64,000 nucleotides of DNA, taken from assembly GCF_009834535.1 (NCBI RefSeq), contig NC_045707.1, positions 19,406,001 through 19,470,000 on the forward strand, given 5' to 3'. The notes beneath the pieces were generated by a model. It did not search any database. It saw only the letters and a program-made list of their open reading frames with translations, and had not been told where the DNA came from. Shown here in pieces: positions 1-20,405 of the stretch; position 1 is the stretch's first letter; each line of letters opens with the position of its first letter. The translations under genes were made by a program, and so were the position numbers. This DNA comes from Camelus ferus. Its lineage: Eukaryota.

Positions 1-844
1 CAAATAAACAAACATATACCTTGAAATTAAATATTCTATTACAAAAGCTTCTCTCCTGACATTGCAATGTAAACCTTACCATTTAATGAGAAGTCACAGA
101 ATGAGTGATATGAAAATGAATAAACTGGTTCAATTTACTGAGGGAAATCTTAGCTTCCTTTTAAAATAAATGCATTGTTATTATTCCTGTTATTCAGGAA
201 GGCAAACGGCTTTCATTGCTATTTTATGGATTATTCCAATAAGCTGACAAAATGTAGCTTCCATTAAGTGAATCCTTGTGTAAATAAGAGGCAAAATATA
301 AAAATATAATGTGGGATAGAGAGAGGGAGAGAATAATAAAATAATTTAGCTGGGAGAAATGTTGAAGAAAAGTTGTTTCATGGAAGATAACGTTTTATTT
401 TAGACATTTGTACAGTTTGGTGTCCTTAGCCTATGATGTAGATCCAACCTACCCAATGTCCACTCAGCCTCCTTTCTACCCTGGACTCGCTAATATCTGA
501 GGAAGTCATGGCAATAAATCCATTATCTGTGGCTTCAGAGGAGGAGCAGGAGGTTGGGAAAGTGAACATGAGAGTGGAAACTCAGAAACCTGTCACGTTG
601 TTAAAGATTTAACTCCAATGACTTTCAGATTTGGGAGACATACTCATTTAAGTGACTTTTCTCCTGACACATCTGGCTTTTCTAAATTACACTAGAGAAA
701 AATAATACAAGAATTTGGGTGATAAAAATTAGGAAATGAGATACTTATATTGGGATTGAGGAAGAAAAGACAAGGTGTTTCCCAATGGGAAGGGAAATTT
801 GGGTGGCATTTCTATTCCAGTATGTCTTAGGTTTCAGAAAAAAA

Positions 845-985
845 CTAGATTAAAATCCCTGCTCTTCCCATTTAGGTTCTGCGATTTGGATACGAGTTTT
901 AAAAATCGTTTTAGCCTGTTTACAATCTGTCAAATAGGGATTTTATAAAGAAATATTCTATGTGAAACAGACTCTGGCATATGGT
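845..985 (+). mobile_element. MIR fragment (paralogous copy at ~18637-18790, minus strand)
   Basis: AAATCCCTGCTCTTCCCATTTAGG...ATCTGTCAAATAGGGAT resembles the MIR core. Confidence 0.5.
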
Positions 986-1173
986 AAAAATCTTACTTTA
1001 AAACATGTCATCTAGTTTCATTAACTTGTTTAAAAATCTCCTAAATTAAATTAGCATGACATAATAGTTGACTTCCAGAGGCAAATTCCAATTCTATCTG
1101 TGGGTAATCCTCTTTTCTTTAAGTCTTCTCTTTGTGTTTCCTCTTGTAGTTGACACAAGAGAAGAGAAAACAA

Positions 1174-2113
1174 ATGAGGAACTACACAGTAATAAGAGAG
1201 TTCATCCTCCTGGGACTGTCCTGATGACCCACAGCTTCAGGCTGTCATCTTCATCTTTCTGCTCATCACCTACATGCTCAGCATCACTGGGAACCTGACC
1301 ATTATCACCCTGACCCTGCTGGACTCCCACCTCCAGACCCCCATGTATTTCTTCCTCAGAAACTTCTCCTTACTAGAGGTGTCATTCACAACTGTCACTA
1401 TACCCAGGTTCCTGAGCACCATTGTTACAGGAGATAAAACCATTTCCTTTGATGACTGTATGGCTCAGTTATTTTTTTTCATTCTCCTGGGAGTCACTGA
1501 ATTTTACCTATTGGCCGCCATGTCCTATGACCGCTATGTTGCCATCTGCAAACCTCTGCATTACTTGACCATCATGAACCAGAGAGTCTGCATACTGCTT
1601 GTCTTTGCTTCTTGGCTGGCTTCATTCTTAATTATATTCCCATCACTCATGCTATTTATACAGCTTGATTACTGTAAGACCAATGTCATTGACCATTTTA
1701 CTTGTGATTATTTTCCTTTATTACACCTTTCCTGTTCAGACACCAAATTCCTAGAGACAATGGGTTTTTCCTGTGCTGTGTTCACTCTAATGATCACTTT
1801 GGCACTGATATTCCTGTCCTACATATATATCATCAGCACAATTGTGCGGATTCCTTCTACCAGTCAGAGGACAAAGGCCTTTTCCACGTGTTCCTCCCAC
1901 ATGATTGTCATCTCCATCTCCTATGGCAGCTGCATCTTCATGTACATTAATCCATCAGCAAAGGATAGAGTGTCTTTGAGCAAGGGTGTGGCTGTGCTCA
2001 ACACCTCAGTAGCCCCCATGCTGAACCCCTTTATTTACAGCCTAAGGAATCAGCAAGTGAAACGAGCCTTCATGCACATGGCAAGGAAGATTGTATTTTT
2101 CTCAAGCAAATGA
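1174..2113 (+). pseudogene. OR6C1: OR6C1-like olfactory receptor pseudogene, +1 frameshift after codon 16
   Basis: ATG at 1174 reads [16 protein letters not shown] then TGA (1222-1224). The intact paralogue at 16588(-) has CTG TCC GAT GAC where this copy has CTG TCC TGA TGA. The rest of the receptor ([46 protein letters not shown]) continues in the +1 frame, which is the 279-aa ORF from 1274. Confidence 0.88.
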
Positions 2114-3639
2114 AAAAACAAATGTGCTGTTTCATAAATCAGAGGCATAATGAGAGCAATTAAATGAAAATCACGGCCTTTCAAAATCTGTTAATTTCCA
2201 CATAGCCTCCCATGAGTTATTTTTCATTGCGTATAATTTTATTGCCAGTGTGTTATCAAGAATATTTGTACATGTATATATTTTTCTTTTTTTCCTTTCA
2301 AATTCTTCATCTATATATATATTTATTCATTTTCCTTTTAAATTCTCTTCCTTCTCTCATGCACTTCCCTTCCTTTGGGCTGGTCTTTCCACTCAGTAAC
2401 TATGAGACTAAACTCAGTGCATTTTTGAAATCTTTTTTAATTCCAATTTTTCAGAATAATTTTTAGAAAATGAAAGAAAGACAGAAAGAGTTGCGGCAAG
2501 AGCACACAAGAGAGAACTGCGTCTTATGGTTCACCAGGACACACCCTTTCTAGAAATTGAGGAAATATTAAATCACGTTTAACATTATTTTTAATTTAGT
2601 ACCCAATGACCATGAACAAAGTCTGACAGTCTTCCTAGAATGTAACACATACTATCCCCGCCACATTGTGGACCGCTTAGTAAGTATGTGAAAAACAGGA
2701 CAACTGAAAGAATAACGTAATTATATTTTTTTGAGAAATCAAAAAACATTGCTCACTACTAAGTTTAAATTTTCTGTGCCGTATAATTTATCAATTCGAA
2801 AAACAATTATGACTTCATAATTGCTTAAGGAAAACTATGAAATAGCCCCTCCATTTTGGAACTCCATAATTCATTTATATACCATAAAAATTCTTAATAA
2901 AATCCTGAAGAAATAAATATTAATGGATACCAAGTATGACTATGTTTGCTGTGGCTCTGTGGTATATTTAAATAAATGATTAATGTTAAACTGGTTTTTT
3001 AATAATCAATAGCTAAGAGTTTTATAACTTTCTCATGTTTGTGGCTCTTTTGCTATAATGGCTTACACATACAATTTATTTAATTGCCTGCTTAAATGAC
3101 ACACCTAATTAATAGAAAGGAAGGCGCAGACAATGGCAAAGTTGTACTGTATTTAAAACTGAGTTTTTTTGTTAAAAAGCTTATGTTCTGTCTATTTGAA
3201 GCATCGCATTGGACAATTTACTGATTAGAAATTATATGACAATCATTACAAAATCATGCAGTTCTGGACCTGAACTTTTTTTTTTCTGTTTTCCATGAAG
3301 TCAGAAGCTGAAATAATAATGATGGTTACTTAAAATCATCCTAAATTTTTTTAACCATTTTTCTTCAAAACAAAGGCTGTAATTGTAACTCATTGAGCCA
3401 AATTCTTATTGATATTAATATACTATACACAATTCAGAGACCTACATCTATGATTTGCAAAAAAATAAAACAAAACAACTTATAGAAAAAGTACTGTGGA
3501 GACTTCCAGTTTGTAGGCAGGTCATGGAATTACTATTTCCTTCCTTCATACTGAAACTATAGTTCCTAAACTAACTGGAAACATTCAAAAATAATGAAGT
3601 TTAGACTTGATTGAAGATTGTAGGTTCTTAAGTACTCAA

Positions 3640-5210
3640 TAAAAATATACCATAAAATGCAGACGAGTATAGATCTGAGAATTAAAAGAACTGTAAAACT
3701 ATTACAAAAGATACGAAGGAGTTTATGCTGGTATTTTCAGATGATACAGCCCTCTGTATAACTCTATACAAACTCATTAGTGGTTATTACACGTTTTGAA
3801 TCTGTATCAGGATTTTGATTGTCAATACTAGAGGTCAACAAACTTTTTCTGTAAAGGGCAATATATTCATAATTTAGATTTTGCAGGTCATAGTGTCTCC
3901 CATGCAGCTCTCCCCCTCTGTAGTATCTCTGTAGCTATAAAAAAATTGTAAATGAATGAGATTAAGTATTTTCTGATAAACTGTTGAACAAAAATAGGTG
4001 GTGGGACAAATTTGGCCCATGGACCATAGTTTGTCCACCCTTGTCTTAGACTTTTCTGTGAACACTGGTCCACATATTATCTCATTTAATATAATTTGAC
4101 TAAAATGCGAAAATTCAATAATAGATGTAAGATGTTAACATTTTTAACTCCAATTTTTATTTTTTACTTTGAACTTGAATGAAAGCAATCTTACAAAACA
4201 TGTCCAGAGGAAAAAAAGAGGTAAATGTTTCTAAATCATTTTTGGATGTTTGTATAATTCTTAATGTCAAATGATAATATGAGAAATGAAAAAATCACCA
4301 GCAATTTGATTCATAAATTCGAAGATAAAATAGTAAAAGAAATTAGCAAAACTCCTATGTCATGTTGAGAACAATTTTATCCCAAAGGTAATTTATCTCT
4401 AAAAAGTCTATTTGTGGTATTTACCACATTAAAAGAGTAAAGATGGGGAAAAAAAGGTTAAAGAGAGAAAATCACACATTCTGTTAAAATCAAATGCTCA
4501 TTTATCATTTTAAAAAAATCTCTTAGTAAAATAGAACAAAACATTGTTTGAGTAGCATAAAGACCTGACTAGATCATCACAATCAGGTATGCTATATGCT
4601 CCTTAATTGGCTCTAATTTGAACAAGTCAACTATAAAATGGTATTTTGGGAAAATTGGGGACATAAGAGTTTGAGCAAAGTGATAAATAATATCAAAGAT
4701 TTTTTGTTAATTTTGCTAGCTTGAAAATTGCATTGTGGTTAAGCAAGAATACAAACATGTATTTTAGGAATTCATTCTGAAAATACACAGGAGTGAAAAG
4801 GTATGATGTTTAGGTGTTGCTTTGAAATACACCAACAAAAGAAAAATAAACTTTTAAAAAGACAGCTAAAATAATTTTTTAAACTTCATATTGTTTGAAT
4901 CTGCTTGATCTGTATGAGAAATTCATTTCTCCACTTTCCTATCTTAGTGTATATTTGAAAATATTCATAATAAAAATTACAGCAAGGATCATGCTTAATT
5001 TTTTAATCAGTAGCAACAGCCTTGGTAAAATCAGCTACAAATGAGAATGACCACTGTCTCTGCTTTTATTCAGTGCTCTGCTGTAGGTTCTATCCAGGGC
5101 ACTAGCACAAGAAAACAATATATTCAAAAGTATTGGAAAGGGGGAAACAACAACAAAAAAAGCCTTCTCTGCAAGTAACATGATTTTTCTCCCAGGGCCT
5201 TAGTATATTT
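3640..5210 (+). mobile_element. Old L1 (L1ME-like) ORF2 and 3' fragments, mirrored in arm B at ~12560-14110
   Basis: Degenerate ORF2-like and 3'UTR-like A-rich sequence with no open frame. Confidence 0.55.
3829..4043 (-). mobile_element. MER58A-like hAT-Charlie MITE (arm A copy)
   Basis: Degenerate terminal inverted repeats; reverse complement of the 13714 copy. Confidence 0.8.
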
Positions 5211-5270
5211 ACATTAAATGTTTCTTTTACCAGCAAATCTCCTCTCCCAGATATCTGCATGGTTAACACC

Positions 5271-5790
5271 CTCCCCTTCGTCAGGTCTCTGTCTAAACGT
5301 CACTTCCATAATGCCCACCCACTATTGAAAATCATACCAGCTCTCCACTTCCAAGGCTCTTCAGTTTCTTCTCCTTCACAAAATACTTATTAATGTATAA
5401 AATACCATATAATTCACTAGTCAATGATGTTCATGCCTATTGTCTATAACCTCTCACAGCCCTTACCCCATGGAAGCAGGAATCTTTGTCTCCTGCACAA
5501 AGTGATGCACTCCCAGCAGTGGTGTGCTGGAGCCCACCCAGAACACTTCCCAGTAGTCAGTTGTGCATGTCTCTCCTCAATTCTGAGGTCAGTAAGGGCA
5601 CACTGGGAGCTGGAAGCCTGCCATGGTGGGGAAGACTTTAATCATAGAAATTGACAAACTCAGCCCCTCTACTCCACCCTCCTGAGAGGCAGTTAGTTGT
5701 TCAACATTTACCAGAAGCCACTAATTCTCCTCATGTAGAACATGCATCTGCCACGTAGTGGGTACTCAATAAATATTTTTGAATAAACAA
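5271..5790 (+). mobile_element. L2 3' terminal fragment, split by MER63A
   Basis: CCATGGAAGCAGGAATCTTTGTC...GTAGTGGGTACTCAATAAATATTTTTGAATAAA resembles the L2 tail. Confidence 0.65.
5517..5723 (+). mobile_element. MER63A-like hAT-Blackjack MITE inserted in an L2 3' end
   Basis: CAGTGGTGTGCTGGAGCC...GTTGTTCAACATTTACCAGAAGCCACT termini. The arm B copy (~12335-12498) lacks the 5' end. Confidence 0.75.
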
Positions 5791-6749
5791 ATATTTTGAA
5801 ATAATTTAGAATGTTTCCAATGTCACATCAATCAGAAGCATTAACTAAATATTTTATCCAGAATAAACACATAAAATTTATAGGACAATGTAGATAACAT
5901 TGATTTAACTTTTTAAATAATGTTCAAATACAACGTTTCATCATAGCTGGATAATTTTGTATAACAAAGAAGTGATTATTTACATCTTTTCTATGGTATT
6001 TGGGGTTCATTTTTCTTCTTTTGTTTTACATTAGGCCATTTGACAATTTTTTTATTTATACTCATTTTTTGAAGTCAGTAATAATTCTTATTATGGTTTG
6101 CATTTTGAGCTAAGCTTTCTAATGGCAGGAATTTCTAAAGGATCTGAATGAACATTTATTTGTTTCCTAAAGAATTATTTTAACTATCTGGGTTATGCCC
6201 AGAGTCGTATGTGATCCAACATCATCTATGAGTTAAATACACTTCTGAAATTACAGATTCAGTTGATAGAATAATAACACAATTAAGTGATAGTATTCAG
6301 TAAGTGGCAAGCCAATCAGACATCATGCTGAGGGGCTTACCTATGAAGGATAATATCACTGGAATTAATTAGAAACATACATTGGGATTATTCAGTAATA
6401 TTCTGCCAATTCAGGTTTAAAGTTTTAAAATATTCTTATCTTTAACACTTTGATGTACTAAATGTTATTTTGGGATTCTAAACATGTTAAAGCAAAATAT
6501 ACTTGTAATTGAATTCTTCCTCCACTCTCTAAGGAGAGTAAAAGCTGGTAGCTGAACTATGTATGTTTCGTTAGCCTAAAACATAATCACTCATCAACCT
6601 CAGAATACTCGAAATAATTGGACACATTATTAAAAAGCAGCTGTCCTATTAGCTTGTGGATAGGAGTGTAATAGAGATAAATCAGTCTAAATTAAAAGTC
6701 AATTAATATGAGGCCTAGAGAAAAGCTAGAGAGCTATTAGGATCCAGGA

Positions 6750-6868
6750 ATAGGAAGGAAGGAAGGGATGGGAGGGAAGAAAGGAAGAAAGAAAGAAAAA
6801 GAAAGGAAGAAGGAAGGAAGGATAGAAGGAAGGAAGGGAGGGAGGGAGGGAAAAGAAAGAAAAGAGAC
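6750..6868 (+). repeat. Purine-rich compound microsatellite (GGAA/GAAA/GGGA)n
   Basis: Seen directly. Confidence 0.95.
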
Positions 6869-7019
6869 AATTCAGCACCTGGGAGGCTAAGAAAAAATAT
6901 AATGGAGAAGAAACTAAGGATTTTTCAAATGAAATGCAGAGCTTTGTAAGATAGAAATCAACTCCCTTTTTCTCTAAAATCAATAAAAACCACATTGCTC
7001 ACAAATACACATGTGCTGG

Positions 7020-7160
7020 AGATTAAATACTTAACTTCTTTCTGCTTCAAAGTCTTTATCTGAATAGTAATAATACTCACCTCATACAGGTTTTTTGGTT
7101 GCTGTTTGTTTAGAAAAATGAGATAAATGATATATAGTCAGTATCTGGTAATCAATAAAA
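7020..7160 (+). mobile_element. MIR fragment
   Basis: ATCTGAATAGTAATAATACTCACCTCATACAGG resembles the MIR core. Confidence 0.45.
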
Positions 7161-7939
7161 TCTCAAACACTGATGGCTACATGTATTATTGTTACAGAGT
7201 TTAAGAAACAAAATATGAAAAGAATCACTATTTGAATATAAAAATAAAGGCAAAGGATAAGAATTTTCATCAGTAGGAAATCAGTTTCAGTGAAATGTGT
7301 TGAATAAATATTTTCAATCTGTATTTTAACATGTATCAATTTGTAAAACAAATTCAGCCCACCTCAATGTCTATCTATGTATTGCCCTGTGTGTTAATTA
7401 GTTTTTTATTCATCCTTTCCTACTGTTTTTTTCTGTCCTACTTTCAAATACTTTCATCTTTCAATCCTATAAATAATCTGCACTCCTAGCAATGAAGGCA
7501 TACGTGCTTTACATTCATATTTATAACTGTGAAGAAAATAAATTGTAAAATGTTAAATTTATATTACATATATGTGTTTATATAGTATATGTGATGTGTA
7601 TTGTATTCTTTTAGTAATAAAATTTCCATCTCTCATAGAAGCAAATGTGGAAATCAAGTTAAAAATATCCAATATCCAATGCCAGACTTCCAAATATTTA
7701 TATTCTTGGTTCATAAATATTCCCATAAAGAGATGTCATACGTACAAATAGAAACTGAGGATGAGTCCAGCATTTATGGGAGAAAAATAGGGACTTGTTA
7801 TACAATCATAGAAAAGTCAGATTCTAAATCGAACTTTCACACACTCAGCATCACAGGTTGTTTATGAATTTGCCTCATTTACCTCAATCATTTTGCTTTT
7901 TTTATATTTTCTTAACCATATTTATAAAATGATTTATCT

Positions 7940-7995
7940 GTGTCTTTTAATGATGCCTCACTTGGCACTCTGTTTACTTAATGAATTCCCCTGAG
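7940..7995 (+). promoter_or_regulatory. Candidate OR promoter: two homeodomain (Lhx2-type) sites next to an O/E (Ebf) site
   Basis: CTTTTAATGA (7944-7953), CTTAATGA (7977-7984) and TCCCCTGAG (7987-7995, fits TCCCNNGRG), 1.7 kb upstream of the 9701 ATG. Confidence 0.5.
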
Positions 7996-8580
7996 CGAGC
8001 AAGAAAAACACAGATAAAAGAAGGCCAGTTCCATATGTATGACATACACAGAGAACATTCCTATTTTCTATTTTTTGAAGAAGCATTTAGGGAAAAATAT
8101 AATAGTTTTTGAAGCCTAAGGAAAATATTACTTATATTTTATACCTGTATAACCACAGAATTGCAAAAGCTCACTTAAAATATTTATATTAATACAAAGA
8201 AACATGTCTTAATAAATAGTGTTTTGTGTTATATGAAAAGGGTCAAATGTAAGAGTACTATACTAGTTCACTCAGGTATTAATGAATTTGTACATGGAGC
8301 TTCAGTAGGAGACAAAAAGCAAGTATGAATTCTATTATAAGAAAATATGCCCCAAAATTTGCAATAACAGGAATGAAGGATATTGTGGGTCAATTATCAG
8401 TCTAATAATGAGAACTATAATCCTAGAGAGCTATGACAAAGTTAACCACCACACTTGCTTTGAGAGTATGACAGAAATCAAAAACATCGCTAACTCAATT
8501 TACCAGCCCTGAAATTATATAAATATGGAAACAAATCAGATAATAAAATTTGAGACTGAATCATCAAGAAGAACCAGGAC

Positions 8581-9654
8581 GTAAGTAAACTTGTTATTAT
8601 TATTGTTATTATTATTCAGTATAATATACATTATTCTATCTCATTTAAATGTTTAAAGTATTATTCACATATGTGTTTGTGAACTTTCAACTCTTTTCAT
8701 ATTAAAAATTAAATGCTTGTTTCCTCCCAAGAAGACTATTAATGGAGTCCTAAAGAGGCAGCACAGCAATAAGTCTTGGGTTGGTCATTAATTTTTTTCT
8801 AAGTTAAATGGCATGCTCTTACAGAAATAGGATTATAAAAAAGACATTCTCCATTGGAAAAATATGTGCTTCCCAGTAAATGTTATTTGGACCATTTACT
8901 TGTTCATTTGCTAAAGTAATGTTGTTTTTTAAAAAAAAAAAAACTGCATTATGCATTGTATGAATTAAGTTGTTTCTAGGCAACTATTTATTTTAGTATT
9001 AGAAGCTGCCCTTTCTTGTCTTTTGGCCTTTTTATCAGAAAAGGAAAAAAATTTTGATGTCAATCAAAGCCTTAAGAAAGAAATTTAGGAAAGAATGCCA
9101 GCAAAACATTCCCATGGATAAGTACATAAGTTCTAAAGTGAGATGATTACTATGTTGACTTGTTTAAACTTGTGAAAGTATCCTAAACTATGTGGGCCTC
9201 AGTTTCTCAAAATGTAAAGTGTGGAGGGAGGACTGCACAACTTCCTGTAAACTTTCGAATTCTATATTTAGGTTATCTGCAATCCATATTGGTTTTCATA
9301 ATACTGAGGAAAGAAAAAGAATCAATGAGAATATTTTTGTATTTTTTTACAAAAGAAGCTAAATATTTTAAAGAATAATTTCAAGCTTAATTTTAAAGAA
9401 ACGTTAGAAGAAATAGTTTCTGCTTAAATGTTATCATAAGTTTTTATTTTATCCACAGCCTGTGATAATGTATTTACAAAGGTGAGAGATCAATAGTTAA
9501 CTTCATTACTCAAATGAAAGGTCGAATGGAAATTGGAAAGAGTTATTGAAGGGGACCCACATTTTTAAATTGCATAGATTATTCATTATCATTGATACTT
9601 TAAAAATTTTATATTCTATCCTCAGACTTATTTTAACTTTTTTATGTTCTATAG
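8581..9654 (+). other. Putative 5'UTR intron of the 9701 OR
   Basis: Donor GAC|GTAAGT at 8581 and pyrimidine-rich acceptor ...ttctatAG at 9653-9654. The pairing is inferred. Confidence 0.45.
9150..9270 (+). mobile_element. MIR fragment
   Basis: GGGCCTCAGTTTCTCAAAATGTAAAGTG matches the MIR core. Confidence 0.55.
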
Positions 9655-9700
9655 GGGGAAGGTAAATTTTCTGTTCTAAAGTAGGGGAGAAGGATCAGCA

Positions 9701-10639: not shown

Positions 10640-11870
10640 AAGTATTTGTAGCATTAAAAGAATAAAATTTTGTCAATGCATTCTATTATTCACACTCTCT
10701 CCAAACTCTCTTTCCTTCACTATTTACATTATATATATTTGGTTATGTATTTTTTCCCTCTTGTTTATTCCCATATAAAATCTCCCCCATTATGAACCCA
10801 ATAAATTTGACAAAGCTAAATATTGCCTCAGAACTTTTCTGTAAATTGTATTATTTAAATGCATTTGGATGAAGTGAAAAGCACAGGTTAATGTTACAGT
10901 TTTGAGTAGAAGTGGTTTGCTTTTGAGGAGACATAGGCCATTTAGTTTGATGGAAAGAGTGTTAGAATAGAATAGAAGTGGATCTTTGAACTTTTCATTC
11001 ATACTAGGTAATACAAAGGAAAGTTACTAGGAATTTTTTATTCTATTTGGCAATTCCATGAAATCAAATAACCACGATCACCAGAGGGTTTGAAATAAAA
11101 TATAAGTAGCTACTCAAACATTTTTAAAAGATCAGAAACTCATATATATTCAAGTTCTTTATGCTATTAATAGTATCTATGATAATAATGAGAAGGAGGA
11201 GAAGGAAGAGGTAGAGGGGTAGAAGATAACATTTTTTCAGCAATTACCATATTCCAGATCTATTCTAACTGTTTTCTGCATGTTGGCTCATTGAATTCTG
11301 CCAACAACTTTATGAGGTACCTATAATTGTTATTCTCTTTCAGTGAGAGGTGTTTTTCTTTAGGTAGATCTAACATCTCAAAAAATTAAAAACAGAGAAC
11401 AGATAATGTAAAATAATGTCAAGTAAAATGGATGAAAAATGGTGAGAGTTCAGCTTTCTGGAGAAACAAGTTTTAATCTGAGAGTCTAGAAATGCCTTTA
11501 GGGTTTTGGGAAGCAGAGAAAAACAGCATCTGTTGATACTATTCTGAACAGTATTAGATACGTCATATGCAATATTCATTTTGCAAAACCTCTTAGAGAG
11601 TGAGTGTTACAGTTCCTACTACACAGGTGTATAGAATGAAACTGAGGTTGAGAGTTCAATGTCACAGAGATATACCTTTCTGAACTGAAATTTAAATCTA
11701 CTTTTTTTTTTTAACATCAAAATCAAGACTAGTAGGGGTACTGTCACTTGAACAATGACTTTCATTTGTAACAATTTATGAATAGAAATTTATGTTAAAT
11801 ATTAGAACTGTTAAAGGGTTTTCTCATTCTGGCTTTACTATGATCAAATAAAATATGCCTCAAAAAACAG

Positions 11871-11974
11871 GGAGGGGAGGGTATAGCTCAGTGGTAGATT
11901 GTGTGCTTAGCATGCACAAGGTACTAGGTCCTATCCCTACCTTCATTAATAAATAAACAAACAAACAAATAAAT
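11871..11974 (+). mobile_element. tRNA-derived SINE resembling camelid Vic-1
   Basis: GGGGAGGGTATAGCTCAGTGGTAG (A box), degenerate B box, (AAAT/AAAC)n tail, and 8-bp TSD AAAAACAG (11863-11870 and 11975-11982). Confidence 0.8.
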
Positions 11975-13713
11975 AAAAACAGTTGTTAAGTGGCATAATA
12001 TAAAATAAAAAAGAAAAATGAACACTAAAAAAAAAATACCTTAAATATATCCAATTCATTATTTCTTTGTCATACTAAGTTGTCTAGCCATGATGAAAAT
12101 ACACATTTATTTGAACACTATTTTAAAAGCTAAATCAATGTTGTGTATGTTATTATATAAATTATATGTGTTTATTTTGGGTAAAATGTTTTTTTTAAAT
12201 GTTTTTTTTAAAGCTGCTGATTACCGTGACATTGGAACCATTCTAAATTATTTTAAAGTATTTATTTATTTAAAAAAAATTTATTGAGTATCTACTACAT
12301 GGTAGATGCATGTTCTGCACAAGGAGGATTAGTGACTTCTGGTAAATGTTTAACAACTGCCTGTTGGCAGATGGAGAAGAGGAGCTGATTTGTAGAGTTT
12401 GTCAGTTTCTATGATGGTCTCTCACCATAGCAGATTTCAAGCTACAAATGTGCCCTTGACTGACCACAAAATTGAGTAGACTTGCACAATTGGCTTCTGG
12501 TGTTAACCATGCAGATACCTGGGAGAGGAGACTTGCCAGTGTAAGAACATTTAGTGTAAATACACTAAGGTTTTAGGAGGAAAATCATGTCATTTGCAAA
12601 GAAAGATTTTTTTTGTTTCCCTCTTTCCAATAATTTTAAATATATTTGTTTTCTTATGCTAGTGCCCTGAATAGAACCTCCAGCAGAGCACTGAATAAAA
12701 GCAGTGACAGTGGTCATTCTCTTCTTGTAGCTGATTTTACCAAGGCTGTTACTATTGTTTAAATAAATTAGGCATATTTGCTGTAATTTTTAAATCATAT
12801 GCTAGGATAGAGAACTGGAAAAGTAAATCTCATGTACAGATCAAGCAGATTCAAAAACTATGAAGATTTTTAAAAATACTTGCTTTAACTGTCTTTTTAA
12901 AATTTCTTAAAAATTTGTTGACATATTATAAACCAGAACTTAAACATATCTTTCACTCCTGTATACTTTCAGTATGAAATTCCTAAAATACAAGCTTGTT
13001 TTCTTGCTTAACTACAGTGCAATTTCCAAGCTAGGAAAATTGACATGCACACACACACAAAATTTTGTTGTCATTTATCACCTTGCCCTTACTGACATAT
13101 CCCCAGTCGTTCCAAAATATCATTTTATACTTGACTTGTTCAAATTAGAGCCAAACAAGGAACATACAGCCTACCTGGCTGTGATGATTGAGTCATGTCT
13201 TTAATGCTACTGAAACAATGTTCTGTTCTATTTTACTAAGAGATTTTTAAAAATCATGAATGGCATTACATTTTATCAAAGGAGGTGTGATTTTCTTTTT
13301 TTCACTTTTTTTAATCTTTAATTTTTTAATGTTTAAATTCCTCAAGAACGCTTTCTAAATATCAATTACTTTTGGGATAAAATCATATGGAACATGAAAT
13401 AGTAGTTTGCTAATTTCCTTCAGTATTTTATCTCCTAATTTAACAGTCAAGTTGCTGGTGATTTTTCATTTCTCAGATTATCTTTGGATACCAAGAATGA
13501 CATAAAAGAACAAAAATGAGTTAGAAATGTTTACCTCTTCTTTTCTTCTGGAACTGTTTTATAAGATTGCTCTCGTTCATGCTCATTATAAAAAAATTAA
13601 AGTTGGTGTTAAATTTAAAAATCTTACATCTATTACTGAATTTTCACATTTTAGTCAAACTACATTACATTAAATGAGAACATGTGGGTCAATGTTTATA
13701 GAAAAATCTAAGA

Positions 13714-13936
13714 CAGGGGTTGAAAAACTATGGTCCACGGGCCGAATTTGGCCCACCATATATTTGTGTTCAATAGTTTATCAGAACACACCTAAGCCCG
13801 TTCATTTACACGTTGTTTATAGCTGTATTCACACTACAAAGAGGGAGAGTTGAGTAGTTGCATAAGAGACACTATGACCTGCAAAATCTAAATTATTAAT
13901 GTATTGTCCTTTACAGAGAAAGTTTATTAACCTCTC
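13714..13936 (+). mobile_element. MER58A-like hAT-Charlie MITE (arm B copy)
   Basis: CAGGGGTTGAAAAACTATGGTCCACGGGCCGAATTTGGCCC...GAGTTGAGTAGTTGC...CCTTTACAGAGAAAGTTT follows the MER58A consensus. Confidence 0.85.
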
Positions 13937-15649
13937 ATATCGATAATCAAAATGCTCAGATTCCAAACATTTACAATAACCACTAAGGAGGCCGTATAGA
14001 GTGTTACAGAGGGATGCATCGTCTCCTAAGACCAGCATAAACTCCTTCATATCTTTTGTAATAGTTTTACAGTTCTTTTAATTCTCAGATCTATACTTGT
14101 CTGAATTTTATGGTATATTTTTATTGAGTACTTAAGAACCTACAATCATCAATCAAGTCTAAACTTCATTATTTTTGAATGTTTCCAGTTTAGTTTAGGA
14201 ACTGTAGTTTCAGTATGAAGGAAGGAAATAATAACTCCATTACCTCTCTGCAAAATGCAAATGTCACTTTTTAAAATACGTTGTTTTGTTTGTTTTTCAG
14301 CACATCATAGACCTGAGTCTGTCAACTGCATATACTACATGACTATCAAGGAGAATCTGGTTCAATGAATTAACAATTACAGCCTTTGTTTTGCAGAAAA
14401 AATGGTTAAAAAAATTTAGGATGATTTTGAGCAACATTATTATTATTTCAGGTTTTGAATTCATGGAAAATGGGAAAAGAAAAGTTTGGGCCAGAATTGC
14501 ATGATCCTATATGATCATCACAGAAATCCTAATTAGCATGTTTTCCAATATGATGCCATATTCTGATGCTTAAAAAAGAACATAAATTTTTTTTAATTTT
14601 AATTTTATATACAGTGAAACTTTGCCATTGTTAGCTATTTTCTACCAATTTAACTAGGCTTGTCTTTTAAGTAAGCAATTATGTAAATAGTATGTGTAAT
14701 CTATTATATTAAAATAGCCACAAATATGAGAAAGTTACAAAACTCTTAGCTACTGATTATCCAAAGACCAGCTTAACATCAGGCATTTGTTTAAATGCAC
14801 TACTGAGCCACAGCAAATGTAGTCATATTTGGCATCTAGTAATATTTATCTCTCCAGGCTTCTATTAAGAATTGTTATATATGTAAGTTAATTTTGAAGT
14901 TCCAAAAAAAAAATGGGGCGTTTCATACTTTTTCCCTGAGCAACTGTGTATTCAAAACAGTGTTTTGAATTGATAAATTATATGGCACAGAAAATTTTAA
15001 ACTTAGTAGTGAGAAATGTTTTTCATTTCTCAAAAAATATAATTACATTATTCTTTCAGTTGTCCTGTTTTTCACATAGTTACTAAGTGGTCCACAATGT
15101 GGCGGGGATAGTATGTGTAACATTCTAGGAAGACTGTCAGATTTTGCTTATGGTCATTGGGTACTAAATTAAAAATAATGTTAAACATGATTTAATATTT
15201 CCTCAATTTCTAGAAAGGGTGTGTCCTGGTGAACCATAAGACGCAGTTCTCTCTTGTGTGCTCTTGCCCCAACTCTTTCTGTCTTTCTTTCATTTTCTAA
15301 AAATTATTCTGAAAAATTGGAATTAGAAAAGATTTCAAAAATGCACTGAGCTTAGTCTCATAGTTACTGAGTGGAAAGACCAGCCCAAAGGAAGGGAAGT
15401 GCATGAGAGAAGGAAGAGAATTTAAAAGGAAAATGAATAAATATATATACAGATGAAGAATTTGAAAGGAAAAAAAGAAAAATATATACATATACAAATA
15501 TTCTTGATAACACACTGGCAATAAAATTATAAGCAATGAAAAATAACTCTTGGGAGACTATGAGGAAATTAATAGATGTTGAGAACCCTGATTTTCATTT
15601 AATTTCTCTACTTTATGCCTCTAATTTATGGAAGAGCACATTTGTTTTT

Positions 15650-16588
15650 TCATTTGCTTGAGAAAAATACAATCTTCCTTGCCATGTGCATGAAGGCTCG
15701 TTTCACTTGCTGATTCCTTAGGCTGTAAATAAAGGGGTTCAGCATGGGGGCTACTGAGGTGTTGAGCACAGCCACACCCTTGCTCAAAGACAGTCTGTCT
15801 TTTGCTGATGGTTTAATGTACATGAAGATACAGCTACCATAAGAAATGGAGATGACAATCATGTGGGAAAAACACGTGGAAAAGGCCTTTGTCCTCTGAC
15901 TGGTAGAAGGAATCCGCACAATTGTGCTGATGATATATATGTAGGACAGGAATATCAGTGCCAAAGTGAACATTAGAGTGAACACCGCGCAGGAAAAAAG
16001 CATTGTCTCCAGGAATTTGGTGTCTGAACAAGAAAGGTGTAATAAGGGGGAAAAATCGCAAGTAAAATGGTCGATGACATTGGACTTACAGTAATAAAGC
16101 TGTATGGATATCATAAGTAATGGGAATGTGATTAAGAATGAAGCCAGCCAAGAAGCAAAGACAAGCAGTATGCAGACTCTCTGGTTCATGATGGTCAAGT
16201 AATGCAGAGGTTTGCAGATGGCAACATAGCGGTCATAGGACATGGCGGCCAATAGGTAAAATTCAGTGACTCCCAGGAGAATGAAAAAAAATAACTGAGC
16301 CATACAGTCATCAAAGGAAATGGTTTTATCTCCTGTAACAATGGTGCTCAGGAACCTGGGTATAGTGACAGTTGTGAATGACACCTCTAGTAAGGAGAAG
16401 TTTCTGAGGAAGAAATACATGGGGGTCTGGAGGTGGGAGTCCAGCAGGGTCAGGGTGATAATGGTCAGGTTCCCTGTGATGCTGAGCATGTAGGTGATGA
16501 GCAGAAAGATGAAGATGACAGCCTGAAGCTGTGGGTCATCGGACAGTCCCAGGAGGATGAACTCTCTTATTACTGTGTAGTTCCTCAT
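15650..16588 (-). CDS. OR6C1: Olfactory receptor OR6C1-like (312 aa), intact copy
   Basis: The true ATG is at 16588 (MRNYTV...). The track's TTG start at 16615 is the first base after the splice acceptor. All OR motifs are present and the sequence resembles human OR6C1 as I recall it. Confidence 0.93.
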
Positions 16589-16781
16589 TTTTTTTTTTCT
16601 CTTCTCTTGTGTCAACTACAAGAGGAAACACAAAGAGAAGACTTAAAGAAAAGAGGATTACCCACAGATAGCATTGGAATTTGCCTCTGGAAGTCAACTA
16701 TTATGCCATGCTAATTTAATTTAGGAGATTTTTAAAACAAGTTCATGAACATAGATGACATGTTTTAAAGTAAGATTTTTA

Positions 16782-18622
16782 TGAAAGAGCCTATATGATC
16801 AAATAATCAAACTTACCCTGTAAACAAAATTAATCTTGATTTGGCTATATTTAATAAAAATGAAGGTAACATTAAAGAGAAAAAGATTTTATTTTAGTGG
16901 ATATTAAATTCCAGTTTTGTTAATTGAGGTCTGTATTTACTAAGACTCACTTCCCAAATCATTGCTTGCTGTTGTTACATTGCGGCAAAGGTTAATTAAA
17001 TTATTAAAGACACTCTAGGTTTATTTCTGAAGCTCAGTAATCTATCCTTGGTGGAAGATCTGATGCCCCATCACCTTCAACCAGGGGATTATACATACTG
17101 GAACAGGCATGACTTAAAGAACTGTCTCCAACCTGGATGGAAGGACCCTTTATCAGGTACTCTTAACCAGACCATGCACAGTGAAACCTAAAGGAAATTG
17201 ACTTTTGGATTAATTTCCAGTCAGAAAGAGCCCTTGCACTGGCCTACAGAGTAGTGCTCACCTTAAAACAATGCTCAAATGGAGAAGAAGCTACCAGGCC
17301 ACGATGAGAAGACGACAACATCTGAGGTAGACAGTTGACCGAAGACACCAGACCAGGCCTGTTTACCAATTACTTTGATAATTGTTCATACCTTTGATTA
17401 TGAACTAATCCAATTGTTAGGTTTATGGTAAATTACCTATATCTAGTACTTCTGTGTTACCTTGGCGGGTTTCCCTACTCCAAGGCTCTCACAAGATAGC
17501 CCTCAGAAAATTTATTCTAAAAAGAAATTATAGTTCTGTTTAGGCCACTGTTGACATTACAAGGTGGGAGGCCTCACCTGGCCAATTAATAATACCTGCT
17601 CTGAGCCTGACCATGAATATGAATTTTCTTATAAGATCACTCAAGCTCAATCAGAAACACAAGGAAAATTTTAACCCAAAAAGGTAACTTCTCGACTATT
17701 AAATTCTTACTCGTGACTTTATTAACATTACTAGCTGTATTATTGATACCCTGTCTATTTTATAAGATTGTTCTCTCTTACATTTTCCAGTGTGTAACTA
17801 GGCCTCCAACAAGATTGATGATGGCTAAACATCTTGAGGAAAACGATAAAATTTACAAATTTATAACTGCATAGAATAATTTTAATAGTGTGATTCTAGG
17901 TATGGGAATGAGCAACAAGGGGTAAACATTTCCTGGATCATAATACACTAGTAAGACAGGTGATCCAGAGAATTTTTAGTATCAACAGGCCTGATCCAAA
18001 AACTAGCACTTTGAGTGGCATGTCAACAGATACTTCACCAGATATAGGAATGAGCCTTCCTAGCACCATGAGACAAAATTGGTCATGAAATGTCTCCCAA
18101 AATATTGGTCGAATTTAGGACCAAGGGGGAGCACTGTCAACTAAAATACTGCAATCATATCAGTAAACAAAGAATGCTGAAACCAAGTCATCAGCGGCTG
18201 CCACCACCCCCCAGTGAGAACAGGCCTACAGCCCAGCCTCTGTAGCCACTCACAATGGTGCAACTCTGAGGGGACTCAGAATAAGAAAGGACAGGATACT
18301 GGCCCTAGATAGCCAGATGCTTGTCAAAGGAATGAGTTAAATGAGCCCACATGTTTCCTTCCTCCCATACATAGAAAAGCACTAAATTCTTTAACTTGAG
18401 ATGTCTGGTTTTCTTTAGATACCAAGCACTCTTTTATTGTTCAAAATACCTGGTCTTTGTTGTAAAGCTCCTATATATCCAACCTCCTCCCCCACCTCTT
18501 CAGAGCAGTCCCTCAGAGCAATCTGAGGGGCTGTCATCCCGGCTCGAGTCCTCTTGCCAAATAAAACATAACTCTAAAAAATAAATGAATGAATGAATGA
18601 ATGAATGAATGAATTAAAAAAT
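16782..18622 (+). mobile_element. 5'-truncated ERV1 (MER4-group-like) internal fragment plus U3-R LTR and A-rich tail, flanked by a ~15-bp TSD
   Basis: Degraded integrase C-terminus at 17069-17168 (HHLQPGDYTYWNRHDLKNCLQPGWKDP/YQVLLT). Purine tract at ~18123-18131, LTR from TG at 18135, AATAAA at 18560-18565, tail at 18576-18622. TSD AAAGTAAGATTTTTA (16767-16781) versus AAACTGAGATTTTTA (18623-18637). Confidence 0.85.
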
Positions 18623-20190
18623 AAACTGAGATTTTTACCATATGTCAGTGTCTGTTTCAAATATAATGTTTCTTTATAAAATCCCTATTTGACTGAGTGG
18701 AAACAGGTTAAAATGATTTTTAAAAATCCTATCCAAATCACAGAACCTAAATGGGAAGAGCAGGGATTTTAACCTGGGTTTTTCTAAAACCTAGGAATAC
18801 TGGAATACAAATGCTACCTGTTTACTTCTTAAAAGCCTCCCCCTAAATGACTCCCTTCCCAATGGGAAACACCTTGTCTTTTCTTCCACTCCAATAAAAG
18901 CATCTGATTTCCTAATTTTTGTCACCCAAATTCCTGTAATATTATTTCCTAGTGTAATATAGAAAAGCCAGATGTGTCAGGAAAAAGGTCACTCAAATGG
19001 GTATGTCTCCCAAATCTGAAAGTCATTGGAGTTAAATCTTTAACAACGTGACAGCTTTCTGAGTTTCCACTCTCACGGTCACTTTCCCAACCTCCTGCTC
19101 CTCCTCTGAAGCCACAGATAATGGATTTATTGCCATGACTTCCTCAGACTTAGCGAGTCCAAGGGAGAAAGGATGTAGACTAGACACTGAGTTTTGGATC
19201 TGCATTATGGGTCAAGGACACCAAACTGTACAAATGTCTAAAATAAAATGTTACCCTCCATCAAACATTTTTTCTCCAAAATTTCTCACATCTAAGTGAT
19301 ATTAGTATTCTCTCACTCTATATATATTCTACTATCTCATATATTTTTATATTTTGCCTTTTATCTACATCAGGATTCACTTAATAGAAGTTCTATTTTG
19401 TCAGCACATTAGAGTAATCATGAAATAGCAATGAAAACCATTGATTTTGTCTTCCTAAATAACAGTAGTAATAATAATGCATTTATTTTAAAAAGAAACT
19501 AAGTTTCCTCAATAAATTTCCTCAGTACATTTTCATATCAGTAATTCTGTGAATTCGCATTACATGGTCAAGTTTACATTCCAATGTCAGGAGAGAATTT
19601 TCTACAATAGAATGTTTAATTTCAAGATACACGTTTGTTGATTTCTGGTATGTGATACATCGTAATACTATGAAATTTCTCAACTTTGTTTTCTTCCCTT
19701 ACATACGTGAGCTTTCTTTTCACTTACTTCACTTTCTAGCAAAAAACTATTGCTGCTTTCAAATTAAGGAAAATTCCAGTTGAAGTGGATGGTGGCCAAG
19801 GCTACTGCGAGAGCATGTGAAGTTCACAAGAAAATGAACTTATTCTTTCACTATTCCTCAGAGACTAGAGAAAAAGTCTTAACAGCACTTAGAAGAAAAA
19901 CAGACATTATAAATACATATTCTGTGAATAAATTTATGGCCATTCAAGAATGATAGATACTTACAAATGTAAAATTCATTGTTCTCAATGAACAATCTTC
20001 TGGGATTAATAGCTGTGTGTGATTCTTTGATCTGTAAACCATTTCTGGGATGTTTCTGGTAAAGTAATCAATGCTATATCTAAGTCAGTAAGACATCCTT
20101 TCAGACTTTCCTTCCTAACTATTCATTCACATTTTTTCCTAGTCCTATGTGATTTATGATAACAAGCTTCATATTCCTTTCTATTCCTTC

Positions 20191-20201
20191 CTTTTTAATG
20201 A
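20191..20201 (+). promoter_or_regulatory. Homeodomain site CTTTTTAATGA, the core of the H/P-element 13-mer, upstream of OR6C1 arm B
   Basis: Exact 11-mer, lying just beyond a minus-strand donor (GTAAGT at 19964-19959). Confidence 0.35.
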
Positions 20202-20347
20202 ATTCTCATATCTTGGAAATCTCATCATTGAATCAAGCTTGTAGCTCACTGCAAGTGAAAATTAACCTATTCAGCAAGCAAATGCTTGCCCTTGTGTTAA
20301 ATAAAACAACTAGAAATGATTTTCAGGAAACTTCTGCCATTCCACAG

Positions 20348-20405
20348 TAAATCATAACTATGGCTTCATAATAAATCATAATGATGGCTTCACAATAAAT
20401 CATAA
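20348..20405 (+). repeat. 24-bp tandem repeat, ~2.4 copies (TAAATCATAAnnATGGCTTCAnAA)
   Basis: Seen directly. Confidence 0.85.

What the first reader, a model, noticed from the sequence alone, without database searches (positions are those of the whole stretch)
1..19640. Old inverted duplication with patchwork gene conversion between the two OR6C1 arms
Seen: arm A (1-~6050) and arm B (~11985-19640) are colinear reverse complements. By eye most flank is only ~75-85% identical (for example 2810-3500 and 3750-6050). Discrete patches are nearly identical: ~1090-1630 (one synonymous change plus the 1-bp indel across the 5' CDS), ~2225-2800 and ~3530-3740. The 3'UTR start (~2125-2215) drops back to ~87%. 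Inference: an ancient duplication homogenised repeatedly by intrachromosomal conversion, as in palindrome-arm concerted evolution, here in an OR cluster.
Basis: partly seen in the sequence, partly recalled or inferred. Interest (0 to 1): 0.75.

Follow-up and report, generated by a model that had tools for sequence, protein, structure and literature searches.

The report
Camel OR6C1 inverted duplicates, patchy gene conversion
Two olfactory-receptor gene copies lying head-to-head in the wild Bactrian camel genome are about 80% alike overall but contain short stretches that have been copied from one to the other (and to a third copy 52 kb away), an ordinary and well-known way in which duplicated genes evolve.

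Summary
Window 1-6059 (+) and 19645-11969 (-) are colinear inverted copies, 86.4% identical, each carrying an OR6C1 gene. A 5.9-kb spacer between them holds a third OR gene. Identity is strongly patchy: background is 78-82%, and seven tracts of 100-610 bp are 95-100% identical. Shuffles never reproduce this.

Conservation does not explain the tracts. Synonymous divergence is 0-0.04 in converted coding segments against 0.41-0.61 in unconverted ones. Camel-alpaca orthologous divergence is the same inside and outside the tracts.

The window is Camelus ferus. The same mosaic occurs in independent assemblies of C. bactrianus, C. dromedarius and alpaca, so it is not an assembly artefact.

- Only the coding tracts (1029-1632, 1794-2128) cluster by species, with conversion after speciation.
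- The non-coding tracts are old conversions that predate the camel-alpaca split.
- A third copy about 52 kb upstream also takes part in the 5' coding tract.
- The arms extend at least 8.8 kb beyond the window's left edge.
- Two coding islands (1633-1793, 1893-1970) have stayed copy-specific.

This is standard interlocus gene conversion in an OR cluster, not whole-arm palindrome homogenisation. It is a clean example of a known process, of modest interest.

The parts
1..6059 (+). Arm A, the part visible in the window. It continues at least 8.8 kb to the left of the window.
   Evidence: Searches show colinearity with 19645-11969 on the minus strand. One search shows that C. bactrianus and dromedary loci (L006, L007) carry 8.8 kb more of arm A, which matches window 28616-24881 and 22690-18622 on the minus strand at 78-80%.
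1174..2113 (+). Arm A OR6C1 coding sequence. In this assembly it is broken by one extra T at 1222.
   Evidence: The extra T is absent from arm A of C. bactrianus, dromedary and alpaca and from all arm B copies. Arm A is an intact 312 codons in C. bactrianus and dromedary. It is a pseudogene in alpaca, with +1 near 1471 and +4 near 1966.
6060..11968 (.). Unique spacer between the arms.
   Evidence: it has no inverted partner; it lies in the same orientation in all four camelid assemblies.
9701..10639 (+). Intact OR6C3-like gene in the spacer (312 aa).
   Evidence: ORF; closest named homologues are 'olfactory receptor 6C3-like', 90-94% identical; about 73.6% nucleotide identity to the arm genes.
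11969..28618 (-). Arm B. 11969-19645 pairs with the in-window part of arm A, and 19646-28618 pairs with the off-window part of arm A. About 22790-24880 does not align and contains the N run 23767-23896, which was left untouched.
15650..16588 (-). Arm B OR6C1 gene, intact (312 aa).
   Evidence: 100% identical to 'olfactory receptor 6C1-like [Camelus bactrianus]'; intact in all four camelids.
1023..1632 (+). Tract 1, paired with B 16743-16131. It covers 150 bp upstream plus codons 1-153, is 99.3% identical and is still being converted.
   Evidence: dS 0.02; clusters by species; six species-concordant sites at 1268-1567, plus 1510/1511.
1633..1793 (+). Unconverted coding island 1, paired with B 16130-15970. 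Codons about 153-207, 86% identical.
   Evidence: 22 differences. (dS 0.41, 11 amino-acid changes). (18 arm-pattern sites, 0 species). A, B and C form separate clades with 100% support.
1794..1892 (+). Tract 2, paired with B 15969-15871. 100% identical in all three Camelus species.
1893..1970 (+). Unconverted coding island 2, paired with B 15870-15793. Codons about 240-266, 87% identical.
   Evidence: dS 0.61; 9 arm-pattern sites, 0 species.
1971..2128 (+). Tract 3, paired with B 15792-15635. It covers the 3' end of the CDS and the stop codon and is 100% identical.
   Evidence: dS 0.
2129..2213 (+). Unconverted gap just after the stop codon, paired with B 15634-15550. About 85% identical.
   Evidence: 10 arm-pattern sites.
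2214..2731 (+). Tract 4, paired with B 15549-15032. It lies in the 3' flank and is 97.3% identical in C. ferus, 97.9% in C. bactrianus and 98.6% in dromedary. It is an old conversion.
   Evidence: camel vs musk deer site patterns are species:arm:cross 25:0:0, while camel-musk deer identity there is only 0.70-0.75; still splits by arm, with a branch of 0.008.
3534..3732 (+). Tract 5, paired with B 14230-14031. 97.5% identical; an old conversion.
   Evidence: 16:0:0 against musk deer; arm branch 0.017.
496..660 (+). Tract 6, paired with B 19148-18984. 96.4% identical; an older conversion upstream of the gene.
   Evidence: arm branch 0.025.
5015..5125 (+). Tract 7, paired with B 12750-12638. 94.6% identical; the oldest recognisable tract.
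   Evidence: arm branch 0.056.
16782..18637 (+). 1856-bp insertion found only in arm B, about 190 bp upstream of the B start codon. It looks like a degenerate retroviral or retroposed fragment.
   Evidence: gap in A. A-rich tail with (AATG)n and a repeat of AGATTTTTA at both edges; weak match to the MLV integrase C-terminal domain, E = 0.002, below Pfam's cutoff. It is absent from copy C and from musk deer arm B, and present in alpaca.
5269..5549 (+). 281 bp present only in arm A.
   Evidence: It has no other copy in the window and its nature was not determined.
29024..29959 (-). Intact OR6C3-like gene (311 aa) just beyond the last arm-B position that could be checked. It may belong to the distal end of the inverted block.
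   Evidence: 78.8% nucleotide identity to the spacer OR; the horse locus jumps from the equivalent of window 11816 to the equivalent of window 31774.

Best explanation
This is an old inverted segmental duplication in the OR6C cluster of camelids. Its two OR6C1 copies lie tail to tail about 13.5 kb apart, across a 5.9-kb spacer that holds an OR6C3-like gene.

After the arms had diverged to about 80% identity, short stretches (100-610 bp) were copied non-reciprocally from one arm to the other. This is interlocus gene conversion, that is, repair of a break in one copy using the paralogue as template. The events happened at different times. Non-coding tracts at 5015-5125, 496-660, 3534-3732 and 2214-2731 date from before the camel-alpaca split and have been decaying since. 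The coding tracts 1023-1632, 1794-1892 and 1971-2128 are still exchanged.

The 5' coding tract is shared with a third OR6C1 copy about 52 kb upstream on the same strand as arm A. That copy has donated variants to both arms since the dromedary-Bactrian split.

Shown directly: the mosaic, its presence in four species, the absence of reduced evolutionary rate in the tracts, and the post-speciation sharing of derived states.

Inferred: the molecular route (break repair without crossover); that exchange persists around the gene because coding constraint keeps long identical stretches that can seed pairing; and that the two coding islands stay unconverted because of their high mismatch density and/or selection to keep the receptors different.
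For: 1. Geometry and mosaic. Longest identical run 344 bp against a maximum of 101 in 5000 shuffles; dispersion 5.9 against 0.87; HMM mismatch rates 0.012, 0.106 and 0.215.

2. Not constraint:
- dS by coding segment is 0.02, 0.41, 0.04, 0.61 and 0.00.
- Camel-alpaca orthologous identity is 0.96-0.99 in tracts and 0.97-0.98 in background.
- Camel-musk deer identity in tract 2300-2731 is 0.70-0.75, like background, and the musk deer arms are only 0.68 identical to each other there.

3. Not an artefact: the same segment boundaries appear in independent assemblies of C. dromedarius, C. bactrianus, C. ferus and alpaca.

4. Conversion after speciation:
- Six sites where both arms of dromedary differ from both arms of the Bactrian camels all fall in 1268-1567. 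About 0.06 such sites are expected from parallel mutation.
- Polarised with alpaca and copy C: at 1516 and 1525 the Bactrian A and B took the copy-C state. At 1565-1567 the dromedary A and B took the copy-C state. At 1268 a new dromedary state is present in both arms. At 1510-1511 the derived state is in A and C of both Bactrian species but in B of C. ferus only.

5. Trees:
- Background splits by arm, with a branch of 0.236.
- 1029-1632 and 1794-2128 group by species.
- Old tracts split by arm with branches of 0.008-0.056.
- In 1174-1460 the copies A, B and C of all four camelids differ by less than 2%.
- In the islands A, B and C form three clades with 100% support.

6. Tract lengths of 100-610 bp are in the range usually reported for mammalian interlocus conversion (own knowledge). 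The process is well documented for segmental duplications and palindromes (PMC4467073, PMC3723533, PMC2720389).
Against: - No GC enrichment is seen in the non-coding tracts (GC 0.29-0.32, against 0.29 in the flanks), so the GC bias often seen with conversion is not evident. Numbers are small.
- Donor and recipient could be polarised for only a handful of sites.
- Against musk deer, even the 'background' leans to the species pattern (58 species, 18 arm, 23 cross). Either the whole arms were homogenised once after the camelid-ruminant split, or the alignment and long branches mislead. The age of the duplication is therefore not pinned down.
- The mechanism itself (break repair, no crossover) is not observable from sequence.
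Confidence: 0.88

Rival explanations
1. The near-identical patches are conserved functional elements (coding sequence, UTR or regulatory DNA) kept alike by purifying selection. No sequence was transferred.
For: Three of the seven tracts lie in the CDS, and one lies directly upstream of the start codon. Tract 3534-3732 is slightly better conserved between camel and musk deer (0.79-0.82) than its flanks.
Against: - Synonymous divergence falls to 0-0.04 in the tracts and is 0.41-0.61 in neighbouring codons of the same gene.
- Camel-alpaca orthologues diverge as fast in tracts as in flanks.
- Musk deer arms are 68% identical in the equivalent of 2300-2731.
- Derived states are shared between paralogues within species.
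Confidence: 0.03
2. The patches are an assembly artefact. Collapse or consensus bleed-through between paralogous reads made them look identical.
For: The extra T at 1222 and five private substitutions of arm A at 2190-2684 occur only in the C. ferus assembly. Some base-level errors in this assembly are therefore plausible.
Against: The same tract boundaries and nearly the same mismatch sets occur in four assemblies from four species. The differences follow the species tree within each arm.
Confidence: 0.03
3. This is palindrome-type concerted evolution. The whole arms are kept alike by frequent arm-to-arm conversion, as in sex-chromosome palindromes, and the divergent parts are recent escapes.
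For: The geometry is inverted arms of at least 15 kb with a short 5.9-kb spacer. Against musk deer the background leans to the species pattern (58:18:23), which would fit an early phase of whole-arm homogenisation.
Against: - Overall identity is 86%, and 68% of the aligned arm is at about 80%.
- Camel and alpaca arms are strictly orthologous in the background (587 arm-pattern sites against 1 species-pattern site). No whole-arm exchange has therefore occurred since before that split.
- A non-palindromic third copy takes part.
Confidence: 0.06

Closest known systems
Interlocus (non-allelic) gene conversion between paralogues in mammalian segmental duplications and tandem or inverted gene families, including olfactory receptor clusters
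   Same: Short tracts (about 0.1-0.6 kb) of near-identity in otherwise diverged duplicates. Within tracts, paralogues are more alike within a species than orthologues are between species. The process is multi-copy, patchy and of different ages. It is described in general in PMC4467073 and PMC2720389. For OR families, within-species clustering is routinely ascribed to duplication and/or conversion (PMC6969042).
   Different: Nothing in kind. This is a particular, so far undescribed, instance in camelid OR6C1. The literature search found nothing specific on it. The outgroup series here is unusually clean.
Arm-to-arm gene conversion in large palindromes (human Y chromosome P1-P8; PMC3723533)
   Same: Inverted repeat with a short spacer, and intrachromosomal non-reciprocal exchange between arms.
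   Different: Y palindromes have arm identity above 99.9% along the whole arm (PMC3723533 abstract). Here identity is 86% overall and exchange is confined to about a third of the arm. No GC bias was detected. A third, non-palindromic copy takes part.
Mosaic conversion with protected specificity segments in paralogous sensory or immune genes, for example primate long- and middle-wave opsins (own knowledge, not tested here)
   Same: Converted stretches alternate with islands that stay paralogue-specific across speciation. The islands (codons about 153-207 and 240-266) fall in the region of the receptor usually linked to ligand contact (own knowledge of OR topology).
   Different: Selection on the islands is not shown here. 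dN/dS in them is 0.22 and 0.08, which gives no sign of positive selection. A purely mechanical barrier from mismatch density explains them equally well.

Membership tests
Interlocus gene conversion between duplicated genes | Identity between paralogues is significantly heterogeneous along the alignment, with discrete tracts | tested here: met
   run of 344 bp against a maximum of 101 in 5000 shuffles; dispersion 5.9 against 0.87; the HMM improves log-likelihood by 168.
Interlocus gene conversion between duplicated genes | Tracts are not explained by lower substitution rate or constraint | tested here: met
   (dS 0-0.04 against 0.41-0.61). (orthologous identity the same in tracts and flanks). 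(musk deer).
Interlocus gene conversion between duplicated genes | Within tracts, paralogues of one species group together to the exclusion of orthologues, or share derived states | tested here: met
   Met for 1029-1632 and 1794-2128. Not met for the four non-coding tracts, which instead show a much shortened A|B branch, as expected for older events.
Interlocus gene conversion between duplicated genes | Transfer is non-reciprocal (one copy changes, the donor does not) | tested here: inconclusive
   Copy C keeps the same state in all species at 1516, 1525 and 1565-1567 while A and B change. This fits one-way transfer, but rests on only five sites.
Interlocus gene conversion between duplicated genes | GC-biased outcome | tested here: not met
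   non-coding tracts have GC 0.29-0.32 against 0.29 in the flanks. This is a frequent but not obligatory feature, and the power here is low.
Palindrome with whole-arm concerted evolution | Inverted arms separated by a short unique spacer | tested here: met
   arms of at least 15 kb and a spacer of 5.9 kb.
Palindrome with whole-arm concerted evolution | Near-identity (99% or more) along the whole arm | tested here: not met
   86% over the in-window arm, and 76% over all aligned columns of the extension, where the homologous blocks are 78-80% identical by BLAST.
Palindrome with whole-arm concerted evolution | Arms of one species closer to each other than to orthologous arms of a sister species, over the whole arm | tested here: not met
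   background shows 587 arm-pattern sites against 1 species-pattern site; the background tree splits by arm.
Olfactory receptor family 6 subfamily C (OR6C1-like) | Single-exon 7-transmembrane OR of about 312 aa with closest named relatives OR6C1 | tested here: met
   (ORFs). Pfam 7tm_4 / 7tm_1 precomputed on the homologues, which are named OR6C1 or OR6C1-like in many mammals at 84-100% identity.

The most novel reading that the evidence does not exclude
The two coding islands (codons about 153-207 and 240-266) have stayed copy-specific in A, B and C through the whole camelid radiation, while the flanking codons are exchanged freely among three genes. On the most novel reading, selection against conversion keeps these islands distinct because they set odorant specificity. 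The locus would then be a natural domain-swap series that maps the ligand-determining segments of OR6C1. On the same reading, conversion from the intact arm B repeatedly mends arm A, which is a pseudogene in alpaca, frameshifted in this wild-camel assembly, and intact in domestic Bactrian camel and dromedary.
Probability: 0.2. Interest if true: 0.45.

Novelty: new member of a known kind. Interest (0 to 1): 0.3.

Why it matters
It matters mainly as a caution and as a tidy example.

The caution concerns annotation and phylogeny. Trees of camelid OR6C1 genes built from whole coding sequences will be wrong. The 5' half reports species, the islands report paralogue, and three loci are entangled. 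Orthology calls, dN/dS scans and pseudogene counts for this cluster need segment-wise treatment.

As an example, the locus shows conversion tracts of at least four ages side by side, with outgroups that date them. It also shows exchange dying out in non-coding DNA while persisting where coding constraint keeps long identical seeds. It does not reveal a new mechanism.

Tried and rejected
- Constraint as the cause of the patches was rejected by dS and by orthologous rates.
- Assembly artefact was rejected by four assemblies.
- The GC-bias signature was looked for and not found.
- The alpaca protein P0007 could not be looked up because it is not on record. Alpaca was reached instead through cluster members.
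- The search with the spacer OR listed no camelid proteins, because they sit inside 90% clusters. The exact look-up worked instead.
- The left end of arm A could not be reached. The third protein search did not reveal a left-arm OR6C3-like paralogue.
- The horse locus covers only 8.5 kb downstream of the spacer OR, so the absence of arm B in horse is an inference from the jump in homology, not a demonstration.
- Dating by a clock was abandoned. The camel-alpaca rate would put the A/B split absurdly deep, so rates clearly changed along the lineage, and only relative ages are given.
- Pfam on the ORFs of the 1856-bp insertion gave only one sub-threshold hit. An earlier call with a wrong frame failed.
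- The 281-bp arm-A-only segment has no other copy in the window and was not identified.
- The stretch of arm B that contains the N run 23767-23896 does not align to arm A. It was left as it is and nothing was filled in.

Full report
**Source of the window**

The window is Camelus ferus chromosome record CM020779.1 of assembly GCA_009834535.1. Locus L003, fetched by exact protein look-up, is 100% identical to window 1-20639. The arm B protein is identical to a protein named 'olfactory receptor 6C1-like [Camelus bactrianus]'.

N runs lie at 23767-23896 and further right. None was filled or looked up.

Yes. An inverted-repeat scan and blastn find window 2-1000, 985-5270 and 5550-6059 colinear with 19644-18622, 16781-12499 and 12500-11969 on the opposite strand. 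A global alignment gives 86.4% identity over 5730 columns. It has two large indels: 1856 bp only in arm B (16782-18637) and 281 bp only in arm A (5269-5549).

Each arm carries an OR6C1 coding sequence:
- Arm A: 1174-2113 (+), broken by one extra T at 1222.
- Arm B: 15650-16588 (-), intact at 312 codons.

The 5.9-kb spacer carries an intact OR6C3-like gene at 9701-10639.

A sliding-window profile, a list of every difference and a three-state HMM give this mosaic in arm A coordinates:

| Segment | Identity | Class |
|---|---|---|
| 1-495 | 82% | background |
| 496-660 | 96.4% | tract |
| 661-984 | 88% | background |
| 1023-1632 | 99.3% | tract |
| 1633-1793 | 86% | coding island |
| 1794-1892 | 100% | tract |
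| 1893-1970 | 87% | coding island |
| 1971-2128 | 100% | tract |
| 2129-2213 | 85% | background |
| 2214-2731 | 97.3% | tract |
| 2732-3533 | 78% | background |
| 3534-3732 | 97.5% | tract |
| 3733-5014 | 81% | background |
| 5015-5125 | 94.6% | tract |
| 5126-6059 | 81% | background |

Tracts make up 32% of the aligned columns.

The heterogeneity is far beyond chance. The longest mismatch-free run is 344 bp, against a maximum of 101 in 5000 shuffles. The dispersion index is 5.9 against 0.87, and 3.7 against 0.85 for non-coding columns alone. The alternating structure inside the coding sequence was overlooked.

**The structure is larger than the finding**

Arm A is cut by the window start. Loci anchored on the arm A gene in C. 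bactrianus and dromedary (L006, L007) show 8.8 kb more of arm A. This extra sequence matches window 22690-18622 and 28616-24881 on the minus strand at 78-80%. A further zone of raised identity (up to 96-98%) lies at window 28112-27813.

The arms are therefore at least 15 kb (A) and 16.6 kb (B). About 2 kb around the N run does not align and was left alone. In horse, homology jumps from the equivalent of window 11816 to 31774. This hints that the inverted block runs to about 31 kb and includes the OR6C3-like gene at 29024-29959. That inference is unproven.

**Is it an artefact?**

No. Independent assemblies of C. dromedarius (L001), C. bactrianus (L002) and alpaca (L014) are colinear with the window at 99.0%, 99.7% and 96.7%. 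All show the same segment boundaries. In the three Camelus species the mismatch counts per segment are almost the same. In alpaca the tracts are 90-99% identical against 78-81% in the background.

**Is it constraint?**

No.
- Within the coding sequence, synonymous divergence is 0.02, 0.04 and 0.00 in the three tracts, and 0.41 and 0.61 in the two islands.
- Camel-alpaca orthologous identity is 0.96-0.99 in the tracts and 0.97-0.98 in the background, so the tracts do not evolve more slowly.
- In musk deer (L009) inverted A-like and B-like arms flank the orthologous spacer gene, although no OR6C1 coding sequence was found on its A-like side. The equivalents of tract 2300-2731 are only 68% alike there, and camel-musk deer identity is 0.70-0.75, the same as in the flanks. 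All 25 informative sites there group camel A with camel B. The same holds for 16 of 16 sites in 3534-3735.

**When did the exchanges happen?**

With alpaca as outgroup, the five non-coding flank segments of the background show 587 sites where A groups with A and B with B, against one site of the opposite kind. The background tree splits cleanly by arm with a branch of 0.236 substitutions per site. No exchange has therefore touched two thirds of the arm since before the camel-alpaca split.

The non-coding tracts also still split by arm, but with much shorter branches:

| Tract | A\|B branch |
|---|---|
| 2214-2731 | 0.008 |
| 3534-3732 | 0.017 |
| 496-660 | 0.025 |
| 5015-5125 | 0.056 |

These are conversions of four different ages, all older than that split.

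Only 1029-1632 and 1794-2128 group by species. In a six-sequence alignment there are six sites where both dromedary arms differ from all four Bactrian arms, and all lie at 1268-1567. Two more sites (1510, 1511) have the derived state in arm B of C. ferus but not of C. bactrianus. About 0.06 such sites are expected from parallel mutation.

**A third participant**

Copy C is an OR6C1 gene of 313 codons. It lies about 52 kb left of the arm A gene on the same strand (L010). Its relations to the arms are:
- Its 5 kb of upstream DNA is 93.6% identical to arm B's upstream DNA.
- Its coding sequence is 91.8% identical to B and 88% to A.
- Homology stops at the stop codon.

Over window 976-1430 the copies A, B and C are 99-100% alike. 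In a tree of codons 1-96, all A, B and C copies of all four camelids differ by less than 2%. In the two islands A, B and C form three clades with 100% support and branches of 0.12-0.14.

Polarising with alpaca shows the following:
- Bactrian A and B acquired the copy-C state at 1516 and 1525.
- Dromedary A and B acquired the copy-C state at 1565-1567.
- A new dromedary state at 1268 sits in both arms.

The exchange network is therefore at least three-cornered and has been active within the last few million years.

**Age of the duplication**

Alpaca shares everything, including the 1856-bp insertion. Musk deer shares the inverted arrangement but not the insertion.

Against musk deer the background shows no arm-specific orthology: 58 species, 18 arm and 23 cross sites, P about 1e-4 to 1e-7. 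Two explanations remain open. Either the arms were still being homogenised along their length for some time after the camelid-ruminant split, which one genome paper puts at 55-60 million years (PMC3514880 abstract), or long branches and imperfect alignment mislead. I could not decide between these. Only relative ages are claimed.

**Mechanism**

The data fit ordinary interlocus gene conversion: repair of a break in one copy from a paralogous template, without crossover. A crossover between the inverted arms would flip the spacer, but the spacer has the same orientation in all four camelid assemblies and in musk deer and horse.

It is inference, not observation, that exchange persists around the gene because coding constraint preserves long identical stretches for pairing. 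It is also inference that the islands resist because of mismatch density or selection. dN/dS in the islands is 0.22 and 0.08, so positive selection is not indicated. No GC bias was seen.

**Comparison with known systems**

Conversion in segmental duplications, palindromes and long-lived gene pairs is well documented (PMC4467073, PMC3723533, PMC2720389). It is routinely invoked for OR families (PMC6969042). The literature search found nothing specific on camelid OR6C1.

The locus has a palindrome's geometry but fails its defining property of near-identity along the whole arm. It is best filed as interlocus gene conversion in an OR cluster.

**Verdict**

This is a new instance of a known process. 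Interest is 0.3.

Noticed in passing
window 1222 (arm A CDS): The extra T that breaks arm A's reading frame occurs only in this C. ferus assembly. Arm A is intact in C. bactrianus and dromedary. It is independently broken in alpaca (+1 near 1471, +4 near 1966). An older dromedary annotation of the arm A protein is flagged 'LOW QUALITY PROTEIN'. Whether 1222+T is a real private mutation or a consensus error is open.
   Followed up: partly
window 2190, 2231, 2271, 2494, 2684 (arm A): Five substitutions private to C. ferus arm A fall within 500 bp. The two Bactrian assemblies otherwise differ at about 0.12% of sites. None matches arm B or any other camelid copy. Possible causes are polishing errors, a divergent haplotype, or import from an unseen donor copy.
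   Followed up: partly
L011:1-6000 (dromedary) versus L010:1-10000 (C. ferus) and L015 (alpaca): Upstream of copy C's start codon the dromedary sequence is unrelated to that of the Bactrian camels and alpaca. The C-to-A gene distance is 38.8 kb in dromedary against 51.9 kb in the others. Alpaca shares the Bactrian form, so dromedary carries a derived loss of about 13 kb with one breakpoint at the ATG. This would fit unequal recombination between direct OR6C1 copies. DNA 3.5-6 kb downstream of copy C is repeated 10-12 kb upstream of it (about 94% identity), which hints at a tandem unit of about 15 kb.
   Followed up: partly
window 16782-18637: An arm-B-only insertion of 1856 bp has an A-rich, (AATG)n-bearing right end and AGATTTTTA at both edges. 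One short ORF gives a sub-threshold match to the MLV integrase C-terminal domain. It is probably a degenerate retroviral or retroposed fragment. It is present in all four camelids and absent from arm A, copy C and musk deer.
   Followed up: partly
window 29024-29959 (-), and L010:17620-18555 (+): Two intact OR6C3-like genes are 96.8% identical in protein. Their surrounding blocks (window 31246-27984 and L010 16396-19597) are 86.9% identical and in inverted orientation. This is another duplicated pair in the same cluster that may show the same patchy exchange.
   Followed up: no
window 39721-41072 and L010:19595-20942: A 1.35-kb stretch is 97.5% identical between the window and a place about 75 kb away, in opposite orientation. 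It is probably a young interspersed repeat or another recent duplication.
   Followed up: no
window 37625-38722, 49840-50766, 59332-60279 (+): Three further intact OR6C-type ORFs lie in the right half of the window, 70-75% identical in nucleotides to the arm genes. The whole window is an OR6C cluster with seven OR genes.
   Followed up: no
window 27813-28112 (arm B) versus about 8.0-8.3 kb left of the window (arm A, seen in L006): Another zone of 96-98% arm-to-arm identity lies far from the OR6C1 genes, near the distal end of the data. It is probably one more conversion tract, or the approach to a second gene pair.
   Followed up: partly
L008:3544-6174 (horse): Horse has an arm-A-like OR6C1 pseudogene, with about 250 bp of CDS missing, upstream of its orthologue of the spacer OR. 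No arm-B-like DNA is seen in the 8.5 kb downstream.
   Followed up: partly
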